Shown: piece by piece, positions 45,599 through 58,626 of the stretch
How the letters are laid out: each line of letters begins with the position of its first letter
How positions within the stretch are numbered: the stretch's first letter is position 1
Assembly (NCBI GenBank): GCA_033442325.1
Contig: JAWQFM010000007.1
Coordinates: 2,110,208-2,174,207 of the forward strand
Direction of reading: 5' to 3'
Length of the DNA: 64,000 nucleotides
DNA from: Salpingoeca rosetta
Lineage: Eukaryota > Protista > Choanoflagellata
Notes under the pieces: model-generated
What the model was told of the DNA's origin: nothing
Seen by the model: only the letters and a program-made list of their open reading frames with translations
Databases searched by the model: none
Position numbers and translations under genes: made by a program

Positions 45599-45633
45599 TC
45601 ACTCCTCCATCTTACTGCCACCATCACCATCAG

Positions 45634-45713
<80 letters not shown>

Positions 45714-46384
45714 AGTGCGACGGCGCGCGCCACCTTGCGCACGGCTGCGTCGTCCATCTCCATCGGCCAGTCGTCCGACCGCCGCATGTCGTCGCTCAGC
45801 ACCGGCGCAAACTCAACGTCCTCAGAGTCAACCTCGGGCACGCGCACATCCTCCCGCTCCTCTTCCTGCTCGTGTCCGCGCGTCTCAAACGGAAACGTCC
45901 GGTTGAACCCAAACCGGCAGTTCTCCCCAGTGCAGCCCGTGTTGTGCCCCATGTCGCGCTCCTTGTCGCTGCTACCGCTGCCATCGCTCGCGTGCCCATC
46001 GTTGGCGCTGCTTTCTTTGCCATCAACGGTGCTGCTTTCACCGCCGTCATCGTTGCCATTTGCCAGCCTCCTTCTCTCCTCCTCCGCTTCCTCTTGCTCC
46101 TCCTTAAGCCATTGCGCCTGCATCACCCGCCGCTCGGCGTCATATCGCAGCCGCTGCGCCGACACCCGATACCGCGTGCGCACCGTCTCCGCCCGCTTCG
46201 ATATCCGCTGCGCAATCACCGAGTGTGCGGCCAGATGCAGGAAGAACTGCAGCCGCACGTCGCCCTCCTCCTGCTCCTTGTGCTNNNNNNNNNNNNNNNN
46301 NNNNNNNNNNNNNNNNNNNNNNNNNNNNNNNNNNNNNNNNNNNNNNNNNNNNNNNNNNNNNNNNNNNNNNNNNNNNNNNNNNNN

Positions 46385-46446
<62 letters not shown>

Positions 46447-46454
46447 CACACACA

Positions 46455-46508
<54 letters not shown>

Positions 46509-48159
46509 GCACGCACGCACACACACGCACACACACATCAGACACACACCAGGATGAGGTCGATGGCAGCTGGGGTGGCGGGTACGGCACGGAAATCACG
46601 GCGCTTCCACTTGGGAAACCGCGTCTGTACCCGAAAGCACAAGAAGTATACAGAGAAGAGGTGACCACACAATCGCGCAAGCGAGCATGAACACATTTGC
46701 ACACACACGCATACACATTTGCACACACAATTATTCACATACACAGTTGCACACACATGTACTCGCATACACATTTGCGCACGCATATGTACTCGCACGC
46801 GCGCACACGCATGAACACACACACACATATGCACACAAAATGCACGAGTTCACAATCACGCATGCTTGGAACGCACGGAGAAGGCGGGGAGGCGAGCGAG
46901 CGCGGGCGCTGTCTCGCGTGTGGGCGTGCCAAGGTACTGGAAGATGATAAACAGCTGGCCAATCTCACACTCTTTCGCGAACATGTGCGGATGCATGAAC
47001 AAGTCGAGGAACACGCAACCAAACGCCCACATGTCGACGGCCTGCCCATAATACTTGGCGCCAAGCAGCAGCTCTGGCGCTCTGTACTGGAGCGCGTATG
47101 TCTGGTGAACGCAAGAAAATGGCCATAAGGGGCACGGACGAGTCGACAGAACAAACAGGGGCCATGAGGTGTGGCGTTTCTCGTGGAGCAGACAACGCGT
47201 GGTGTCAAACACATACACGCACACACGCACACACGCATACAAGCACAAACACACGCACAAACACACGCACAAGCCCACATGTACACGCAGCACGCACTAA
47301 CACACACACTAACACACGCATGCGGGTTGTGTCGCACCTTTGTGGGATTTTGGTGCAACGGAAGGTGGAGTGGGCGTGCGTTGTGAAAGCCGGCGAGCTT
47401 GAGTGTGCCTGTTACGGTGAGGAGAATGTTGTCTGGCCAGACACCACAATGAACAAGGCCATGGCTGTGACAGCAGTTGAGAGCTTGCAACAGCTGTCGG
47501 CACCACTGGTGGGCTGTCTTGTGATGGACCGTGTCTGCGTTTGCTTCCAAGAACTGGGCGAGGCTTGCCACACACGGCTCAAACACGATGGCAACTTGCT
47601 TCGACGTGGTGATCCAGTCCACCACCCTGTCCATGCGAGCAAGTGAACAGTTGTGAGAGGTAAAGTGGCTGTGGTTGTGGTTGTGGCTATGGTATGGGTG
47701 CGGTTGTGCTTGTGGCTGTGGTTGTGGCTGTAGTTGTCGCTATGGTTGTGGTTGTGGTTGTGGCTGTGGATGTTGGCGTGAGCGCCATCAGCGGGAGAGC
47801 AGTGCCCCGTCCCTTCGCTCGATGATGGTTTGTGTCGAAGCGTCTTGTGATTTGAGTGGTGGAAACTGGACAGAGGAAGTGCGCCACAAGTGTCAATCGA
47901 CAGACGATGTGAGGAGGCGCGATGGGACTTACGAGATGATGTTTTCGTGGGCAACGTCTTGGAGGATGCCGAGTTCCCGTAAACACCGCTCGTCAAGGCC
48001 GTGGCGGTTGAAGTCGTTCTCGTACAGTTTCAGCAACACAAGCTCGCCTGTCTTTCGTGACTTGGCCTTGTACATGGGCACGTCCGATGGCCACAGGACG
48101 CGCCGGAACTTGTGATACGCCTGCACGATTGCCTCCACATGCTGCACACCATCAGCCAT
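45599..48159 (-). CDS. CDK-like probable pseudokinase; charged/poly-Asp tail beyond the gap is probably the same gene
   Basis: YKAKSRKTGELVLLK, GLDERCLRELGIL..HENII, LVHCGVWPDNILL, LKLAGFHNAR, LQYRAPELLLGAKYY..VDMWAFGCVF, CEIGQLFIIFQYLGTP, FPKWKR. Linkage of the 45599-46284 exon across the gap is inferred. Confidence 0.8.
46285..46384. other. Assembly gap (100 N)
   Basis: Run of N. Confidence 0.99.
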
Positions 48160-48216
48160 GATGAACAGACACAGGGTTGTGTGCTGATGTGTGTGTGTGT
48201 GTGTGTGTGTGTGCTG

Positions 48217-48319: not shown

Positions 48320-48688
48320 CTGAGTGGCGACTGAATTCAGTGTGAAGGAAACTGGCTTGCTTTGGCAAAGGAAAAGTGGAAGGAAAGGAAACAAGGACGA
48401 CGGGAAGAAGGAACCAAACAACTGTGGAGCGTAACGATAACGGGGGAAACACACACAACACAGAACAGGGGAAGCAACAGCAGTAGGTGGTGATGACGAT
48501 GGTGATGATGATGAGGGTACAGCGAAACACAGCGTGAATTGGAATCAGGAGGGGAGACTTTGATTGACAAACAGTGTGAGAGCGCGCGCGTGCGTGCTTG
48601 TGTGCGTGTGTGCGTGTGTGTGTGTGTGCGTGTGAGCGTGTGTGTGCGTGTGAGCTTTCCTAAGGTCGTTGTTGTTGTTGTTGTTGCG

Positions 48689-49452
48689 TCACTTGTGGGC
48701 AGCAATCTCATCCAGCGAGACGCGCTTGAGGCTGTTGGCGGGCATGTACTTCCACGCCGGCCGGTCCGCTGTCAGCATCAGCACAGAGAGACGGATGCGG
48801 GGTGCAACATGTGGCGGTGGCAGTGGGATGGCGTGAACAAGGCATGTCAAGAACAGTCGAAACGAGAGGAGAAGCGGAGGGAAGTTGTGTGGAGAAAAGC
48901 CATCGCGCTTATGTTTGGCACACAATTGAGGCAGGCACATAGCAGGAAGAAGGCACACGACAGGAAGATGGCAAGCGCAGACGAAAACTTACGGCGCACA
49001 TCGCCCGTCTCGTCCTTGACGTCGAGGTACCCCGGCACGTGTCCCTGCACGCACACACACGGCATGGCAGGTAGCGATGAGCACGGTGAAGACAATGCAC
49101 ATGTGTATGCACGTACATGTATGGGTGTTGCGTGTTGCGTGTGTAAAAGTACGGGTGTGGTTTGTATGTATGAGTACGTCACGTTTGTGTGTATGACCAC
49201 GTGTGTGTTGTGTACATGAGTGAGTGTGGTGTGTGTGTGTGTGTGGGGGGGGGGGTTGAGCGTGCTGCATACCCGAACAGCGCGGCGAATGTGGTCGACG
49301 TTGTTGAGTTTGCGCACAAGCTCGCTCTTGTCTTCAACCTCAAGATCCTGCACCAAACAGCAACAGGTGAGCACGGCAATGCTCAAGACAATGTTCAAGT
49401 GCTCCACACCACTTTCTCCGCATGTGCGTGTGTGTGTGTGTGTGTGCGTGCG

Positions 49453-49551
<99 letters not shown>

Positions 49552-49647
49552 ACGGACGTCATCTGAAAGCGGCGGGAGGGCGTCGACGTGCTGGTATTGC
49601 GACCGGATCTCGTCCACCGGCAGCGAGTCGTAGGCCGGGTCCTGTAG

Positions 49648-49681
<34 letters not shown>

Positions 49682-51314
49682 CACAACACAACACAACACA
49701 ACACAACACAACACAACACAACACAACACAACACAACACAACACAACACAACACAACACAACACAACACAACACAACACAACACAACACAACACAACACA
49801 CATATGTGAGCATCATCATTAGTATCATCACCAGTAGTTGCTGATAACAGGGAGCGTGTGAACAAAAGCACAATGCGAGAGCAACGTGCAACGTACAACC
49901 GCAGCAAAGACTGCCACGCCAACACTTGGTCGCCAACGTACGCTTTCCCGCTGTGGCTCCGTGTACATTGGGTTGGAGTACCCAAGGTCCGGCTGGGATG
50001 TGTTTTGCGTGTGATGTGAGTTGGATGCATTGCGACGCACGACTACCACCACGCCGGAATGCAGTGTGCATCATCACCACGCCGGAATGCAGTGTGCATC
50101 ATCACCACGCAACTCCCCCCCCCAAAACAAACAGCACCACAGCACCACACCCCTCCCGTCGGTTCAGCCAAGCCACCTGCGGGGCGTGTGTCTCGCCGTA
50201 TTGCCCCTCATCCGGCAGCAGCGACGGCTCCCCATATCCGGGCTCGTCGGGCTCGCCGTACACATTCTCCTGTGTGTGTGTGATTTTGTGTGTGTGTCAC
50301 GTCCATACATACGCACGCACGCACACGCACGCACACGCACGCACACGCACGCACACGCACGCACACGCACGCACACGCACGCGCACGCACGCACACGCAC
50401 GCACACGCACGCGCAGGCGGCAAAGCGCTTGGTAAGGTGTTACCAGCCCGCCACACCACAGACACCAACGAGTGGCACGTACCGCGAGCAGTGCCTGCGG
50501 GTTGTCGTATGGCTGTCACAATCGGAGATGGTGTGCGTGGATGCGAGGGTGAGGGTGGTGAGATGTGTCGGCGAGAGGGTGTGGTGAATAAACACGACAA
50601 CAATGCAACACACAAGCAAAAGCGTAACAAGGGCAAGCTGCACGTTAATACTGCACGTGAATGGAAATGCATGAAGATAAGTGCAAGTACGCAAGCAAAA
50701 GCAAGTACAACATCGTGCATACGTGGTCGTGTTTGATGCGCTGCGGGGCGGAGGGCAGGCTGCTGGGGTTGTCGTAGGGCTGCACACAACATCACACGAG
50801 CACACGGACACGAACAGGGTTGTTGTTGGTTCAGTTGTTGTTTAAGTTGTTGTTGTTGTGAGTTCATTTTTTGAACGCGCATGTTCATGTGCATGTGCAT
50901 GTTCAAGTGCATGTGTGCATGTGCATGTGAAACATGTCGATGCATGCCCCGCATGAGCCCACCCTGCCCCTCTACACATGCAAACTCACGTTCTCGACGG
51001 TCTAAACGCGCACCCGGATTCGCAGGCAGCAGCGTGGTAGCGCGCAGAGTTGAGGAGTGAGAGGGGAGCAGAGGAGCAAGCACACACAAAACAAACCACA
51101 CACATCACCACACAAAGAACCAAAACACCCAAGCAACGAACAAACAAACAAACAAACAAACAAACAAACACACAAACAAACAAACAAACACACAAACAAA
51201 CAAACAAACAAACAAACAAACAACAACACGAACCGGGTTCTTCTTGCGGCGAACGGACGGCTCCGTGACGATGTACTGGTCGTCATCCTGTACGCACAAC
51301 GCAGCCACGTGTGT

Positions 51315-51404
<90 letters not shown>

Positions 51405-51637
51405 AGGTGGGGATCGCCGTGTCTATGTACAAGGACGACGCATGCCGCCGTGTGTGTATGCCTGTATATGTGCGTGCACATGCGATTACATTACGGCAAC
51501 CACCACCATCATCACCACCCCGCAACCAACAGATGGCTTCGCTTCGTTCCCCTCTGCTGTCCCCTCCTGCACACGTGAACGCGAACACGTGCGCAGGCAG
51601 CAAGGAGGGGGGGGGTGATCGTGGTGTGCATGTGTGC

Positions 51638-51688
<51 letters not shown>

Positions 51689-52272
51689 TTTGTTTGTTGC
51701 GTATGCGCGCGCGATGATGGTTTCAGTGCAAGCAACGCAAGTATGTACAGCGTGGTGAGTGAAACAGTTCCAAATCACATGACAATCGTGACCAGACGAT
51801 ACAAATGCCTAATGCCTATTGCCTAATGCACAGTGTCCTAAATGTCGTCTCAATCCATACCACCACCACCCCTCACCACCTTCTCTACGGGTTCAGCCCC
51901 ATGACAAAGCGAGGGCATGCCGATATGTACAAGAACTCGAACCACCGCCTCAAAGTGACTATTGCGACGAACTACCACACGCAAGGAGCGCATGTGCATG
52001 CGCGTGCGTATGCGTGTGTGTGTGTGTGTGTGTTTGTATGTGTGTGTTGGCGTATGTGTAAGTGTGCATGAGTGTGAGTGCACAACTCACCACTTCGAAG
52101 TAGGTGTTGTCCAGCTCGCGTGCGCGCTGCTGCTCCCGGCTCAACGACGCATACGTCTGCCGCAGCACGCGTGGTGGGTGTGTGTGTGTGTGTGTGTGCG
52201 GGTGTGTGTGTGTGTGTGTGTGTGCATAGAGTGTGAGCGTTCAGGCGGCGCTTTGTGCGAGCATAACACTGG

Positions 52273-52303
<31 letters not shown>

Positions 52304-52650
52304 CACACTCTCTTTTATCTCACTCACTCATACGTGCACACACACACACACGGTCCCAACAGCAGCAGCAAGAGCCATGCGGGTGTGCACGTACGGGGTC
52401 GGCTGCTGGAATTCTTTCGTAGATGCTCTTGTCTGCAGCCTTGGCCTGATATGGGCGGTCATATGTGTTGTCCTTCTTCTTCTGCTGCTGCGACCCCTGC
52501 GTCCGTTGTCACAATGGGGTGAGTAACGTTGGTGTGCTGAATGAAAAACAGACACACAGACAAACAAGACAGACAAGACAAGACAGACAAACCAAGACAG
52601 GCAAGACAAGACAGGCAAGACAAGACAGACAAAACAAGACGGACAGACAG

Positions 52651-52682
<32 letters not shown>

Positions 52683-53233
52683 GTAGTGTGCGTGCACAAA
52701 ACACCGGTCGCGTACATTTGCGAGGACGAATGCCTGGCCGAACGTTTCCAACACTTCGTCGCTCAGTTGCCCGCAATCAAAGACGAAGCACTCTAGGTCC
52801 ATCACAACAAAAACGAGGACACAGACACACATTGCAAACGCATGAGTGTGCGAGCGCATGTGAGGTTGCGACATGTACATATTGGTGTGCACGTGCTCAG
52901 CTTTGCTGCAAGTGTATGTGCGTGTGCATGGGTATGTGTATGTGCGTTTGTATGTGCGTGCGTGTGTGTGTGTGCGAGGGACTGTGCACGTGCCGTCAGC
53001 TGCGTGGCCGCGCACCTCTGAGACCGACGTCGTTCTTGCCGACGTAGCAGATGAGCTCATAGTCGTCGTCTTCGCCGCCCGCCGCCAGCGAAATGAACCG
53101 CATGGGGCTGAACTGCAGCATCTGTGTGTGGGGGGATGGCAAGCAAACGAACGAAACCGGGCAGATGTGTTGAGATGACGAGTGGGTCGAGGGTTGCAGG
53201 AGACACATAGGAAGGTACCGAACACAACATGTA

Positions 53234-53275
<42 letters not shown>

Positions 53276-53748
53276 TGTATGTGTGCAGGGGCAATATAAC
53301 CGGCAGGGATGCCGTACTTTTCATGCTTTGTACGTACCCCCACTTCGACGTAGTCGCCCGTGTCGTCCTTCTGCTCGCAGTAGACAGCATCCAACAGCAC
53401 ATGCAGGAGTGAGCAAAGGAACAAGGCTGCTGGGAAACATGTGACAGAGAGTGAGCGAGTGAGTGAGAGTGAGAGAGTGTGTGTGTGTGTGTGAGTGAGT
53501 AAGAGGTCAGTGTGTGCGCACGTGCCTGGACGGGGACGATCATGAGGCCGTCGGAGGAGATGTTGAGGTTGACGTCCACCTCGGCAGGCGTGACGGGGCC
53601 AGACAGGTACTTGCTCAGATACCCGGGCGAGATCTGTGACTGCGGCTTGCGAAGACCAACTCGCGTGGCAACCGTGTGGATCAGGTCGCTGCAAACGGCC
53701 CACAATTGCGTATGGGTTGCGTGAAGAGTTGCGTGTACGTGACAGAGA

Positions 53749-53790
<42 letters not shown>

Positions 53791-54594
53791 CAAGTGGTGC
53801 GTGACAAGTGGTGCGTTAGAGGTGTGTGTGTGTGTGTAGCGTTGCATGAGGTACATGGTATGAAGAGAAGCGAGCAGAGGCGAACGGAGCGGTGAGCAGC
53901 ACACAGGTGTGCACCAAGCGGCCTCCGCGAGCAAGCTTGCGGCGCGTCTCACTCACCGCATCAGCGCTGTTTGATCGATGACGCTCAATGGGCGAAGGGA
54001 CTGCGAAACGACAATGGATCCCACATACTGCCACACCAAACGAAACGGGTCAAGAAACAGAAAAATAAAGGTGTGAGGAAGCGAGCGCACACACATGTGC
54101 ATATGTGCACAGGTGCACGCACATGTGCAAGCTCATACACACATGTGCATTTACACACTTATGTGCATTTGCACAAACATGTGTATTTGCACACATATTC
54201 ATGCACGATCACACACACACACACACAGAAAAAGGGTTGCAACAGTGCTGCTGTCATCACAACCACTGCTGTCATCACAACCACTGCACAACACTATTGG
54301 CCGCGCACGTACCACGACGGGAAAGCTGTAGAACAGTCCCTGTCCTGCACTCAGCGGAGTATCGTCGTGGAGCCAGCCTGAACCAATGACATTTGACAGC
54401 GAATGAGTGAGTGAGTGAGTGTGTGAGTGTGTGTGTGTCTCCTCAGGCAAACGTCAACACTTCAACACACAATGGTGACGCTACGAATCACCCGACCGAT
54501 CCAAAGACCGCTCCCCCCGCCCCCGCCCCTTCCTTCTCTCCTCTCCTCTTCTCCTCTCTTTGCCTCTCCTCCAACCTGACTCAGGCTTGTCCAT
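48689..54594 (-). CDS. Shc-type PTB-domain adaptor with tyrosine-rich tail and no SH2 domain, about 19 exons
   Basis: MDKPES|GWLHDD..SFPVV|YLGSIVVSQSLRPL..|MRFISLAAGGEDDDYELICYVGK..|ECFVFDCG..DEVLETFGQAFVL parallels the Shc PTB (GWLH..YMGCVEVLQSMR..ISFASGG..YVAK..TIGQAFEL). Tail exons end ..SLDEIAAHK*. Confidence 0.85.
49679..49800. repeat. (CAACA)n pentanucleotide microsatellite, intronic
   Basis: Tandem acaac units adjoining a (CA)n tract. The complementary unit occurs at about 32474-32540. Confidence 0.9.
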
Positions 54595-54865
54595 GAACGA
54601 GTGGTCTCTGCGGCGAGAACCCATGATGTGATGTGATGGTCTTCAGATGAGGTCGTCAGAGATGGGATGGTGGTGGCACACACAACAACAGAGTCGCGGA
54701 GTGGGCCCGTCGCGGAGTGTTAATGTCGACACCACATAAAGTAGTAACACAAACACGACTGGCTGTGAGAGAGCGCGCGAGAGAGTGGTGTTGGTTGTTG
54801 TTGTCCTCTGCTACACCCGTTGTCCCTCCCTCCCTCCCTCTGCACCACCCTCCATCTGTCGTTTG

Positions 54866-54998: not shown

Positions 54999-56200
54999 GG
55001 GGTGAAGAAATCGTTCTTCCTGGCTTGATGGAATATGCCACTGCGGTTGTGCAGTGCTGCTTGTTGTTGTTGTTGTTGCTGGTATTGGTTGTGTTGTGTG
55101 TTGATCCCGCGTGTCTGGTGCGCCACTACCGGGTCGTTGTCCCTATACATCCTTTGCCCGTTGTGGGTGCGCCTGTGTGCATGCGCGATTGCTCACTTCA
55201 AGTGTCCACCACGATACCGAATCGCTGGCTGTGTTGATGATCTGTTGCCAGATCTGCGCACGCTGGCCCAAGAGGACAGCACATCACAGTTGCTGCAAGA
55301 GTTTGAGCGCATCCCAACCTTCATGGCCTCCCCGGCTGATATCCCAGATGGCACTGGCCCAAAGAACAGATGTGCGTACTGTGGTGCTTGGCATCTTCTC
55401 CCACACCCCTAGTTGCTTTGTGTTCTGCCCGTTGCGAAGCGTGCACACGATCTTTGGGTTATTGTATGCTTTGCAAGCACACGCTGTTTTGGGCTTGTGC
55501 TTGCGCCCTACTCATGTCTCGCATCACACTGCGCTGCCTTCTCGCGCTTTTCCGTTGCAAACCATACCATCATCGCGTCTGCAGATGTGAACGTGCTGCC
55601 CAGCCCGCACTCCCGGGTGAATCTGGGAAAAGTCGGCTCCGACCACACATCGACAGTACGTTGCTTGTGTTGTCCTGTGTGTGTGTGTGTGCGGTTGTGT
55701 TCGTCTGCCTGTCTGTCTGCCTGTATGTCTGTCTCTGTCTTTGTCTCTGCCTTGTGTGTCTGTGTGTGTGCGATCTGAGCAATGGCACTCCGCTGCGTTC
55801 GATGTCACATCAACACCACCATTTTACTCCGCTTTGTTTTGCCTCTGATGTGCAACTGACTTGCCCCGGCGTCTTCATTTGCACACGACGATGGCGTATG
55901 TGACATCGTGCTGATATTGGTTTGCAGTACATCAACGCCAACTTTGTCACCGGTTACAACCATGCCGAGAACACATACATCGCCGCACAAGGCCCAAAGG
56001 CCAACACCATCTGGGACTTCTGGTGCGTGTGCCTGTGTGTGTGTGTGTGTGTCTGTTTGTTTGGGGGTATGTCTGCCTTGCATGTCTGTGTGTCTGTGAG
56101 CGTGCGTGTCTGCGTGCGTGTTTGTCTTCCTGTGCACGACTGTGCTTGCGTGTGTGCAAGCTGACAGGCTTGCTAACTCAATTGATTTACCTCTTGTCCC

Positions 56201-56237
<37 letters not shown>

Positions 56238-56765
56238 GGTTTCCTATGTGTTGTTTTGCAGGCGCATGATCTGGGAGCACAAGTGCAGGATAATTGTGAT
56301 GATGACGGGGCTGAGGGAGAACGGCCGTGCAAAATGCGACAAGTACTGGCCAGATATTGGGGAGACCATGACAGACAAGACCACGTTCACAGTACGCACG
56401 CACATGGAGCTCGTGTGTGTTTGTGCGTGTGTTTGTGCGTGTGCGTATGTGTGTGTGTATGTGTGTATGTGTGTGTGTGAATGTTTACATGTGTTTACAT
56501 ATGTGTTTACATGTGTGTATGAATGTTTACATACATGTGTGATTGTTTACGCGTGTGAATGTGCAAGCGCGGTCGTTGGTCCGTCCTGTTCCTATGGACC
56601 GCCGAGCTCGCTGCTTGATTGTGACGTGTGTGCCTGTGCTCTCCCATCCCGCGATGTGGCAACAGGTGCGGACGGTGGAGGACGTGGACTGTGAGGACTA
56701 CGTGCTGACGACGTTCAGCCTGCAGCACATCCCCTCGGGCGAAACCGTCAACATCTCCCACTACT

Positions 56766-56801
<36 letters not shown>

Positions 56802-56906
56802 GCGCACGTTCGCTTTGGGGAACATGGCGAGGGAGGTTGGCCATCGCAAGGGAATGTCGGAGGAGAATTGATGTCTTGTTTGCACGCCTGAAGACTCAAC
56901 ACACGT

Positions 56907-56940
<34 letters not shown>

Positions 56941-57381
56941 TATCGGCTTGTGCCACTGCCTCGTCCGCCATCGCAGGTTCACCAGCTGGCCCGACCACGG
57001 TGTGCCTGACGAGACGTGGCCTGTGCTTGACTTTGTGGGCGCCGTTCGCAAGCACGCGAACCATTCGCACGACGCCGCGCCCATTGTTGTCCACTGTAGC
57101 GCAGGCATCGGCCGCACAGGTCCGACTTGTGCGTATGTGTGCATGTATGTATGTATGTGTGTGCACATGTTTTTCGATTGGGGCATGCACTGTTTTGCTA
57201 CGTTGAGTCGTTTGATTGACGTCGTCATCACACACACACACACACATGCACACGTGAGCAGGCACCTTCATGTGTTTGGACATCTGCATGCAAGAGTTGC
57301 AGAGCGAATGGCGGTGCGTTGTCTGTCGACACCGTCTGATCGCCAGTGCATGTACTGCTTCCCTGTAGCTCAAACGCGCCT

Positions 57382-57477
<96 letters not shown>

Positions 57478-58608
57478 CGAGTAACCTCTGATCACACGCA
57501 CACACACACATACACGCACACACATGCCGTGTGATGATGGCACTGGCGTGCAGGGTGTGCGATGTGTTTGGCACCGTGTACCGCATGCGTCAGGAACGCG
57601 GTGGTGCTGTTCAGACAGGCGTCCAGTACACATTCATCCACAAGGTCCACATGCCCATCTTGTTTCCGTGTGTGCCCCGTTGTATCTCCCTCCTTGCCCG
57701 CCCTGTTTCCTCTCAATCCCCAGCAGCCGGGATCTGTGCTCACACTGTGCTGGCTGTATCCCCCCGCCACTCTGCGTGGCCTTTGAATGCGCCCTGGACA
57801 CCATGCGAGCAGGCGTTGTATGATTACGTCACGCCTGGCCACCCAAAGTCCATGTTTGGAAGCAACATGCCAAGGTGTGCGTGTGTGCGCGTGTATTGTG
57901 TGCGTACGCGCACATGTGTGTGTTCATGCTTGACTGGTCGTCCATTCATCCTCCGCTCTTCTTCATACTGCATGCTTCTGCTGCTGCAATCCTCACCTCC
58001 GCCTCCGTCCATCACCACGCTCTCTCCTCTTCGTTCTCCCTTTGTTTCCTCTTCGTTCCTCTTCGTTCCTCCCTTCCCCCGGCTGCCAGGGACGTTGGGC
58101 TGATCAAGCCGTCTGGCGGCAGCTTTGGCTTCACCCTCCGCGGGTCCTGCCCGCCGTTTGTTGTCAAGCTCGACAAGCACGGCATCGCAAAGGCAAACGT
58201 ACGCTCCTCTCCTTTATTTTGTGTGTGTGTGTGTGTGTGCGTGTGTGCGTGTGTGTGTGTCTATGTGTGTGTGCAGACGATCACGCTGGCTCAGATGCCG
58301 CCCCTGCGTCCAGTGCCATGGAACCACGCTCGTACCTTGCCCCTTTTTCTCTTCACTACACAGCACGCACGTGCACACATTAGCACACCATGTGCGCGTT
58401 CAACATCCACGCCCGCATATTGTTGAATCCTCACGCTGTGTCTTTTCGTTGCGTGCGGGTGTGGCAGGGCATCAAGCTTGCCGATCATTTGCTCGCCGTG
58501 AACCAGCAAGACACCAGCACAATGGAGCACACGCAGGTGGTGGAGCTGATCCGAAACTCAGGCGATGTCGTCACCCTCACCGTCATCTCAAAGGCCCCAA
58601 TCGCATAG
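54866..58608 (+). CDS. Non-receptor classical protein tyrosine phosphatase with C-terminal PDZ domain
   Basis: KNR|YVNV, YINAN, YIAAQGP..DFW|[28 protein letters not shown]|[17 protein letters not shown], then PDZ ([36 protein letters not shown]). Confidence 0.94.
57384..57473. repeat. (CT)n microsatellite in a PTP intron
   Basis: Pure CT run. Confidence 0.9.
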
Positions 58609-58626
58609 CCCTATCGTGTCACTCCC

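What the first reader, a model, noticed from the sequence alone, without database searches (positions are those of the whole stretch)
48689..52500. Modular phosphotyrosine scaffold: each docking motif on its own frame-symmetric mini-exon
Seen: after the PTB domain come about ten consecutive phase-0/phase-0 exons: GSQQQKKKDNTYDRPYQAKAADKSIYERIPAADP | TYASLSREQQRARELDNTYFEV | DDDQYIVTEPSVRRKKNP | TVEN | PYDNPSSLPSAPQRIKHDH | PYDNPQALLA | ENVYGEPDEPGYGEPSLLPDEGQYGETHAPQ | PDLGYSNPMYTEPQRES | DPAYDSLPVDEIRSQYQHVDALPPLSDD | DLEVED..AVR, then GHVPGYLDV... That is about 17 tyrosines and no SH2. Established: YxN binds Grb2 SH2, YxxP binds Crk/Nck/Abl-type SH2, and animal Shc ends in an SH2. Inference: a Shc-PTB protein with Dok/IRS/LAT-like logic, in which any cassette can be skipped or duplicated without frameshift, so SH2 outputs are rewirable by splicing or exon shuffling.
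Basis: partly seen in the sequence, partly recalled or inferred. Interest (0 to 1): 0.75.

Follow-up and report, generated by a model that had tools for sequence, protein, structure and literature searches.

The report
SH2-less Shc-like adaptor, mini-exon tail
This is a real gene of the choanoflagellate Salpingoeca rosetta for a Shc-type phosphotyrosine adaptor that lacks the usual SH2 domain and whose tyrosine-rich tail is split into nine or ten small in-frame exons, but nothing yet shows that these exons are used as swappable cassettes.

Summary
The minus-strand gene 54624..48689 is PTSG_03868 (XP_004995600.1, 439 aa) of Salpingoeca rosetta. Introns 7-16 are all phase 0. The tail has 17 tyrosines, and the gene ends at a stop codon without an SH2.

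- The PTB is Shc-type: the only solved relatives are Shc1 PTB structures, and the aligned binding residues are kept.
- The tail resembles Shc CH1.
- The same genome also has a canonical PTB-CH1-SH2 Shc on another contig, so this gene is an SH2-less paralogue. Its family occurs across choanoflagellates and carries a conserved C-terminal module with no known relatives.
- "One motif per exon" is overstated: the tail exons hold 0-3 tyrosines each.
- The phase-0 run is not exceptional. Two paralogues have about 74% phase-0 introns, and their similar tails lie in exons of up to 417 and 1071 nt. A metagenomic orthologue has no introns.
- The introns here share only microsatellites.

No S. rosetta transcript data could be examined, so cassette splicing is untested. 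One Choanoeca perplexa paralogue has two transcripts that differ only by an in-frame 22-residue piece holding two tyrosines, which keeps the idea alive.

The parts
52716..54624 (-). Exons 1-7 (54624-54576, 54377-54313, 54027-53957, 53688-53526, 53370-53338, 53121-53016, 52792-52716). They encode the N-terminal Shc motif and the Shc-type PTB domain (aa 1-188). Intron 4 has a GC donor.
   Evidence: Exact mapping of P0001. Pfam PID E 2.7e-10. Shc1 PTB structures E 1.5e-14. AF2 pLDDT about 85-96. Foldseek best hit 4xwx.
52395..52496 (-). Tail exon 8, 102 nt, phase 0-0, 3 Tyr (includes YDRP).
52091..52156 (-). Tail exon 9, 66 nt, phase 0-0, 2 Tyr (DPTY, YFEV).
51222..51287 (-). Tail exon 10, 66 nt in the annotated model (weak gtttgt donor). 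1 Tyr, phase 0-0 either way.
50990..51001 (-). Candidate 12-nt micro-exon (TVEN), flanked by ag and gtgagt. It is not in the annotated protein. It is the best-scoring in-frame candidate in that intron.
50723..50779 (-). Tail exon 11, 57 nt, phase 0-0, starts with PYDNP (a YxN motif).
   Evidence: Its first bases plus the acceptor match exon 12 at 16 of 17 positions.
50483..50512 (-). Tail exon 12, 30 nt, phase 0-0, PYDNP again. It is collinear with a contiguous piece of the canonical Shc CH1.
50177..50269 (-). Tail exon 13, 93 nt, phase 0-0, 3 Tyr (YGEP twice, YGET).
49942..49992 (-). Tail exon 14, 51 nt, phase 0-0, 2 Tyr (YSNP overlapping NPMY, then YTEP).
49558..49641 (-). Tail exon 15, 84 nt, phase 0-0, 2 Tyr. 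This is the start of the conserved C-terminal region (the SQYQHVD motif).
49273..49347 (-). Exon 16, 75 nt, phase 0-0, no Tyr. It holds the conserved helix motif (..LVRKLN..RR.V).
48993..49044 (-). Exon 17, 52 nt, phase 0-1, holds the GYLDV motif.
48689..48768 (-). Exon 18, 80 nt including the stop codon. It holds the conserved RP.W.Y motif. The gene ends here without an SH2.
   Evidence: No SH2 hit in the window.

Best explanation
The stretch is the 3' two-thirds of PTSG_03868 of Salpingoeca rosetta, an SH2-less paralogue of the adaptor Shc.

Shown:
- The protein has an N-terminal Shc-type PTB domain. The residues that align with the phosphotyrosine- and NPxY-binding residues of human Shc are kept.
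- It has a tail of about 160 residues that is predicted to be disordered. The tail has 6.7% tyrosine and is related to Shc CH1. It holds three YxN motifs, seven YxxP motifs, three [ND]PxY motifs, and YFEV and YLDV.
- It has a conserved C-terminal module of about 90 residues with no known relatives.
- It has no SH2.
- The family is found in both craspedid and acanthoecid choanoflagellates, and it coexists in S. rosetta with a canonical PTB-CH1-SH2 Shc.

Inferred:
- The PTB docks on phosphorylated NPxY-type sites of receptor or cytoplasmic tyrosine kinases.
- The tail is then phosphorylated and recruits SH2 proteins. Grb2, Crk and Shp2 homologues are reported in choanoflagellates. The protein would thus work like FRS2, Dok or IRS while being Shc by descent.

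The tail is encoded by nine or ten phase-0 mini-exons. My reading is that this is a lineage-specific, intron-dense gene structure. It follows the strong phase-0 bias of this gene family, with at most one local exon duplication (the two PYDNP exons). I do not read it as a demonstrated splicing or shuffling device.
For: - Identity: the protein is found letter for letter as PTSG_03868 and maps exactly to the window.
- PTB: Pfam PID. The only PDB relatives are Shc1 PTB structures, E 1.5e-14, and the match includes the N-terminal motif before GWLH. The best structural match is 4xwx, TM 0.81 normalised by target. S138, R162 and F184 are invariant and K156 nearly invariant in 15 homologues.
- Tail: pLDDT below 50 for residues 192-348. 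Tails of all 21 full-length homologues tabulated have 4.6-7.7% Tyr (the 250-aa fragment P0023 has a 59-residue tail without Tyr). There is local similarity to the CH1 of the canonical S. rosetta Shc.
- Canonical Shc at C9: PID E 1.3e-15 and SH2 E 3e-10 on the same strand, with CH1-like ORF pieces between them.
- Gene structure controls: PTSG_09968 has 13/17 phase-0 introns and tail exons up to 417 nt. M. brevicollis 22120 has 7/10 phase-0 introns and a 1071-nt tail exon. A metagenomic orthologue has no introns. The introns here share only microsatellites.
- SH2 readers in choanoflagellates: PMC7260276 (Grb2, Shp2) and PMC5043372 (Crk).
Against: - No phosphorylation, binding or expression data for this protein were available.
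- The similarity of the tail to CH1 is short and weak (17 residues, E 0.064 in a 10-kb search).
- No intron splits a Tyr core (positions -1 to +3) at any of 11 tail junctions. The post hoc p is about 0.03-0.04. Together with the intron density (one per about 76 nt, against one per 170-300 nt in paralogues), this hints at some constraint or history that the by-product reading does not explain.
- A relative does produce an in-frame isoform with or without a Tyr-bearing piece.
- No genome-wide phase table was available, so the background frequency of phase 0 in S. rosetta is only bracketed.
Confidence: 0.6

Rival explanations
1. The frame-symmetric mini-exons are true cassettes that are skipped or included by alternative splicing, which tunes which SH2 partners the scaffold recruits.
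For: All tail exons are 0-0, so every skip is in frame. No junction cuts a Tyr core. Exon 10 has three possible in-frame 3' ends or micro-exon choices. Choanoeca perplexa transcripts of the long paralogue differ only by an in-frame 22-aa insert with two Tyr.
Against: No S. rosetta transcript evidence could be reached. P0001's 90% cluster has a single member, and no isoform of 241 aa or more turned up. The introns are about 200 nt. From general knowledge, that length usually goes with intron definition, where intron retention is more common than exon skipping. The C. flexa isoforms differ by a frameshift, not a cassette. Paralogues and an orthologue encode equivalent tails without mini-exons.
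Confidence: 0.2
2. The tail grew by tandem duplication of phase-0 exons (evolutionary exon shuffling), without present-day alternative splicing.
For: Exons 11 and 12 both begin with PYDNP, and 16 of 17 bases match across the acceptor and the first codons. Tail length and motif number vary widely between species, from 129 to 697 residues.
Against: No other exon pair is similar. Exon lengths all differ (30-102 nt). The flanking introns share only microsatellites. Residues 280-296, which cross two junctions, align to one contiguous piece of the canonical Shc gene. That points to intron gain or loss inside an old coding stretch rather than to inserted cassettes.
Confidence: 0.2
3. Closed-loop or autoinhibited adaptor. 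The conserved C-terminal module folds back onto the PTB domain, so the tyrosine-rich tail forms a loop, and ligand binding or phosphorylation opens it.
For: The C-terminal 90 residues are conserved in both SH2-less families. AF2 gives them pLDDT 74-88 and a whole-chain pTM of 0.62, although 36% of the chain is disordered. A short strand is predicted at 418-421, with no partner strand of three or more residues within the module. There is a precedent: the Mint1 PTB is autoinhibited by a C-terminal helix (4dbb, listed).
Against: Contacts and PAE cannot be read with these tools. The model of the long paralogue was too poor to test it (mean pLDDT 36). The Atlas search of residues 345-439 found no usable match.
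Confidence: 0.2
4. The tail is not a phosphotyrosine scaffold. The tyrosines serve another role, for example as aromatic stickers in an acidic disordered region.
For: No phosphorylation data exist. Many motifs are not conserved in position between species.
Against: A Shc-type PTB with aligned binding residues kept is attached. YDNP, NPxY-like and Y[LF][DE]V motifs recur across the family and in the canonical Shc CH1. The genome holds at least 92 SH2 matches.
Confidence: 0.08

Closest known systems
Animal Shc family (ShcA-D: PTB-CH1-SH2) and its S. rosetta orthologue at G000:C9
   Same: The N-terminal motif and the Shc-type PTB with aligned binding residues kept. A CH1-like Tyr- and Pro-rich tail with YxN motifs. 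Local collinearity with the CH1 of the canonical S. rosetta Shc.
   Different: No SH2. A conserved C-terminal module (..LVRKLN.. and RP.W.Y) with no known relatives takes its place. The tail is cut into 9-10 mini-exons, whereas the canonical gene has contiguous CH1-like ORF pieces of about 80 and 52 residues.
PTB docking proteins FRS2, Dok and IRS
   Same: The logic is the same: one PTB reader followed by a long disordered multi-tyrosine tail that recruits SH2 proteins, and no SH2 of its own.
   Different: The PTB is Shc-type, not IRS-type. No PH domain or convincing myristoylation signal was seen. There is no sequence relationship outside the PTB fold.
PTSG_09968 / MONBRDRAFT_22120 (long SH2-less Shc-like family of choanoflagellates)
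   Same: Shc-type PTB, Tyr-rich tail (about 6% Tyr), related C-terminal motifs, mostly phase-0 introns.
   Different: The tail is 580-700 residues long and is encoded in large exons (up to 417 and 1071 nt). The motif repertoire differs (TYD[MV], NPDYHE).
One-repeat-per-exon cassette arrays (84-nt LRR and 99-nt ankyrin exons), noted by this scan elsewhere in the same genome
   Same: A run of same-phase, frame-symmetric small exons.
   Different: Those arrays have equal-length exons and homologous introns that were duplicated as units. Here the exon lengths all differ and the introns share only microsatellites.

Membership tests
Shc family | Shc-type PTB domain at the N-terminus, including the conserved segment before GWLH | tested here: met
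   phmmer against PDB hits only Shc1 PTB chains (1shc, 1n3h, 2l1c, 4xwx), E 1.5e-14, covering residues 6-186. Pfam PID. Foldseek top hit 4xwx.
Shc family | Residues that bind phosphotyrosine and NPxY (human R67, S151, K169, R175, F198; numbering and roles from memory) | tested here: met
   The aligned residues are R50, S138, K156, R162 and F184. S138, R162 and F184 are invariant and K156 nearly invariant in 15 homologues. R50 is replaced in at least three of them (P0008, P0009, P0011). Binding itself was not tested.
Shc family | CH1 region with phosphorylatable YxN (Grb2-type) sites | tested here: met
   Three YxN motifs (Y268, Y287, Y331) in a predicted-disordered tail. There is weak local similarity to the CH1 of the canonical S. 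rosetta Shc. Phosphorylation was not tested.
Shc family | C-terminal SH2 domain | tested here: not met
   Pfam finds only PID. No SH2 match falls in the window among 92 in the genome. The frame ends at the stop at 48689-48691. Most homologues end at the same C-terminal motifs, and none carries an SH2 in the precomputed Pfam column.
IRS/Dok/FRS2 docking proteins | IRS-type PTB plus a membrane anchor (PH domain or myristoylation) | tested here: not met
   There is no PH or IRS Pfam hit. The PTB is Shc-type. The N-terminus starts MG, but the following residues do not fit the myristoylation consensus as I remember it, and most homologues have no Gly at position 2.
Exon-cassette arrays (duplicated exon+intron units) | Equal-length same-phase exons with homologous flanking introns | tested here: not met
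   All are phase 0, but exon lengths are 102, 66, 66, 57, 30, 93, 51, 84 and 75 nt. Intron-to-intron matches are only microsatellites. Only exons 11 and 12 share a 17-nt start.
Alternatively spliced cassette exons | Transcripts with and without the exon | not testable with these tools
   No S. rosetta transcript resource was reachable. The only evidence is in relatives: C. perplexa isoforms with an in-frame 22-aa difference and C. flexa isoforms that differ by a frameshift.

The most novel reading that the evidence does not exclude
Choanoflagellates carry, beside canonical Shc, two old families of SH2-less Shc paralogues. In these a conserved C-terminal module clamps back onto the PTB, so the tyrosine-rich CH1 forms a closed loop. 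Short in-frame tyrosine-bearing pieces are included or skipped by splicing, as seen in Choanoeca perplexa and as made possible by the phase-0 mini-exons of PTSG_03868. The result would be a scaffold whose valency is set at the RNA level in a single-celled relative of animals.
Probability: 0.12. Interest if true: 0.65.

Novelty: new variant of a known kind. Interest (0 to 1): 0.4.

Why it matters
Shc links tyrosine kinases to Ras in animals. This work shows three things:
- The closest unicellular relatives of animals have a full PTB-CH1-SH2 Shc.
- They also have lineage-wide SH2-less Shc paralogues that follow FRS2/Dok-like logic.
- The paralogues carry an uncharacterised conserved C-terminal module.

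That adds detail to how phosphotyrosine adaptors diversified before animals arose, and it gives concrete genes to test in a species that can be manipulated genetically. The exon-phase pattern is real. By itself it is not strong evidence for a splicing-based rewiring device. It becomes interesting only if transcript data show cassette use.

Tried and rejected
- Exon-by-exon Pfam scans gave almost nothing because the exons are too short. The database protein P0001, found with exon 4 as query, was used instead.
I repeated the step with references only.
- SH2-remnant idea. The C-terminal motif in the long family that resembles FLVR, and the W in RP.W.Y, looked like SH2 relics. Their order is reversed relative to an SH2, and no SH2 score appears, so I dropped the idea.
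- Introner or repeated-intron idea. Intron similarities are only microsatellites, so I rejected it.
- The AF2 model of the long paralogue family was meant to test C-terminal docking. The model was too poor (mean pLDDT 36).
- The Atlas search of the C-terminal module found no usable match.
- The Barroeca monosierra gene locus was not on record. The metagenomic scaffolds that carry P0003 (1664, 733 and 724 bases in the three places shown) were not examined further.
- My crude ab initio exon finder recovered only 13/18 and 7/11 known exons. Its model of the second short paralogue (L002), which has mixed phases in the tail, is not reliable and is not used as evidence.
- Literature searches for Shc in choanoflagellates found no description of this family.
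Full report
**What is there.** The window is G000:C7:2110208-2174207 of a 55.4-Mb genome in 68 contigs. The gene sits on the minus strand. An HMMER search of 1.84 billion proteins with exon 4 as query returned a 439-aa protein with 100% identity. It is PTSG_03868 / XP_004995600.1 / UniRef F2U5M0 of Salpingoeca rosetta, named only 'PID domain-containing protein'. From then on I used that database protein (P0001) as the reference for the spliced product.

**Exon structure.** An exact protein-to-genome mapping gives 18 exons from 54624 to 48689. The phases of introns 1-17 are 1,0,2,0,0,1,0,0,0,0,0,0,0,0,0,0,1.
- Exons 8-16 are nine consecutive phase 0-0 exons of 102, 66, 66, 57, 30, 93, 51, 84 and 75 nt.
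The annotation lengthens exon 10 by 12 nt, using a gtttgt donor inside a GTTT repeat.
- On position weight matrices built from 33 introns, the annotated donor scores 2.4, close to the training minimum of 2.0. The micro-exon's acceptor and donor score 4.3 and 9.3, and it is the best in-frame candidate in that intron. Only RNA can decide, and all versions are in frame.
- Nearly every intron carries a microsatellite.

**The protein.**
- Pfam sees only PID.
- The only solved relatives are human and mouse Shc1 PTB domains (E 1.5e-14). The match includes the segment before GWLH that is typical of Shc.
- The residues aligned with human R67, S151, K169, R175 and F198 are kept (numbering and roles from memory). 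Three of them are invariant in 15 homologues.
- AF2 with that alignment models the PTB at pLDDT about 85-96 and leaves residues 192-348 below 50. It gives the last 90 residues pLDDT 74-88, with pTM 0.62.
- Foldseek's best hit is the Shc PTB 4xwx.
- The tail (aa 188-439) has 17 Tyr (6.7%). It holds three YxN, seven YxxP, DPTY, NPMY, DPAY, YFEV and YLDV motifs.
- The tail exons hold 3,2,1,1,1,3,2,2,0,1,1 tyrosines, so the title's 'each motif on its own exon' is overstated.
- No junction cuts a Tyr core (positions -1 to +3). The post hoc probability of that is about 0.03-0.04.

**No SH2 here, but a canonical Shc elsewhere.**
- None of the 92 SH2 matches in the genome lies in the window. The frame ends at a stop, and about 530 nt further on a kinase-like gene on the same strand begins at about 48160.
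- Searching the genome with the paralogue P0018 showed a Shc-like PTB exon at C9:1885677-1885850 (minus strand). It lies 1.4 kb upstream of an SH2 match.
- That locus (L004) encodes the Shc N-terminal motif, a PTB (PID E 1.3e-15), CH1-like stretches of about 80 and 52 contiguous residues with many Tyr motifs, and an SH2 (E 3e-10). All are on one strand.
- So S. rosetta has a canonical Shc, and PTSG_03868 is an SH2-less paralogue.
- Residues 280-296 of PTSG_03868 cross the exon 11|12|13 junctions. They align (10 of 17 identical, E 0.064) to one contiguous piece of the canonical gene.

**The family.**
- Word-index and profile searches found about 20 homologues, all with PID only.
- They fall into a short family (295-591 aa, which includes this gene) and a long family (648-929 aa, which includes PTSG_09968, M. 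brevicollis 22120 and Barroeca monosierra P0012).
- Those with names come from Hartaetosiga, S. infusionum, Choanoeca flexa and perplexa, Stephanoeca, Mylnosiga, Barroeca, Acanthoeca, Savillea and Microstomoeca. These include both craspedids and acanthoecids.
- Both families have Tyr-rich tails (4.6-7.7% Tyr).
- Both have related C-terminal motifs (..LVRKLN.. then P.W.[YF]). Pfam, PDB and the Atlas find no match for this region.
- A second short-family paralogue lies at C9:1860574-1864000.

**Is the phase-0 mini-exon run special?**
- Controls mapped in the same exact way: PTSG_09968 has 18 exons and 13/17 phase-0 introns, with tail exons of 38-417 nt. M. brevicollis 22120 has 11 exons and 7/10 phase-0 introns, with a 1071-nt tail exon holding 25 Tyr.
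- A metagenomic scaffold carries an orthologue as one uninterrupted 445-codon ORF.
- So tails of this kind do not need mini-exons, and phase 0 dominates the whole family (20/27 in the controls).
- A run of 10 or more in 17 introns has probability 0.004 at p0 = 0.5 and 0.14 at p0 = 0.74. At p0 = 0.5, tens of such runs are expected in a genome with roughly 88,000 introns. That intron total is from memory, and the estimate is an upper bound because it treats all introns as one chain.
- An excess of phase-0 introns is general in eukaryotes (PMC3488318). Notes of this scan report other all-phase-0 genes in this genome (I did not check them).
- What is unusual is the intron density: one intron per about 76 coding nt in this tail, against one per about 170 and about 300 in the two controls.
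- Intron-to-intron similarity is only microsatellite. The one sign of exon duplication is a 16-of-17 base match across the acceptor and first codons of exons 11 and 12, which both start with PYDNP.

**Splicing evidence.**
- None could be obtained for S. rosetta. P0001's 90% cluster has a single member, and no variant of 241 aa or more was found.
- Choanoeca perplexa has two transcripts of the long paralogue that are identical except for an in-frame 22-residue piece with two Tyr.
- Choanoeca flexa has two transcripts of an orthologue that diverge by a frameshift after residue 320.
- The first is what the cassette idea predicts. The second is not.

**Likely mechanism.**
- Inferred: the PTB binds phosphorylated NPxY-type sites. 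The tail is then phosphorylated and recruits SH2 proteins. Grb2 and Shp2 homologues (PMC7260276) and Crk (PMC5043372) are reported in choanoflagellates.
- The conserved C-terminal module may pack on the PTB, as a helix does in Mint1 (4dbb). This rests only on AF2 confidence values. A second model meant to test it failed.

**Verdict.** This is a new variant of a known kind of adaptor, and the cassette-splicing claim remains open.

Noticed in passing
window 55200-58610, + strand: A classical protein-tyrosine phosphatase (PF00102, with the WPD loop and the [10 protein letters not shown] active-site motif) followed by a PDZ domain. It is transcribed divergently from the Shc-like gene, with about 600 nt between the two starts.
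   Followed up: partly
G000:C9:1883600-1887270, minus strand (L004:3600-7270): A canonical Shc orthologue of S. rosetta: Shc N-terminal motif, PTB, CH1-like pieces with PGYLDV and YDNP motifs, and an SH2 close to animal Shc. The CH1 is in large contiguous pieces, not mini-exons.
   Followed up: partly
G000:C9:1860574-1864000, + strand (L002:553-4000): A second short-family SH2-less Shc-like gene with Tyr motifs and the same C-terminal motifs. The protein searches did not return it, so it may be unannotated or mis-modelled. My crude exon model suggests mixed intron phases but is unreliable.
   Followed up: partly
window 53524-53525 (intron 4 donor): The annotated model needs a GC-AG intron (donor gcacgt). 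An orthologous transcript supports the resulting protein sequence across this junction.
   Followed up: partly
window 48600-54700: Nearly every intron of the gene carries a microsatellite: (GT)n, (CA)n, (ACACA)n, (CACGCACGCA)n or (AACA)n.
   Followed up: no
L003:8975-10039 (Monosiga brevicollis CH991543.1): The long Shc-like gene of M. brevicollis (22120) also has a tyrosine-phosphatase-family gene (PF13350) as a near neighbour. It belongs to a different phosphatase family from the one beside the S. rosetta gene, so this may be coincidence.
   Followed up: no
L009:1227-2564 (metagenome scaffold SONG20-1_SAMN08290282_METAG-scaffold_23422): An orthologue from an uncultured source is encoded as a single intron-free ORF of 445 codons covering the PTB, the tail and the C-terminal motifs.
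   Followed up: partly
window 45600-48160, minus strand: A CDK-like kinase gene starts about 530 nt downstream of the Shc-like gene's stop, on the same strand. It is the subject of another note of this scan.
   Followed up: no
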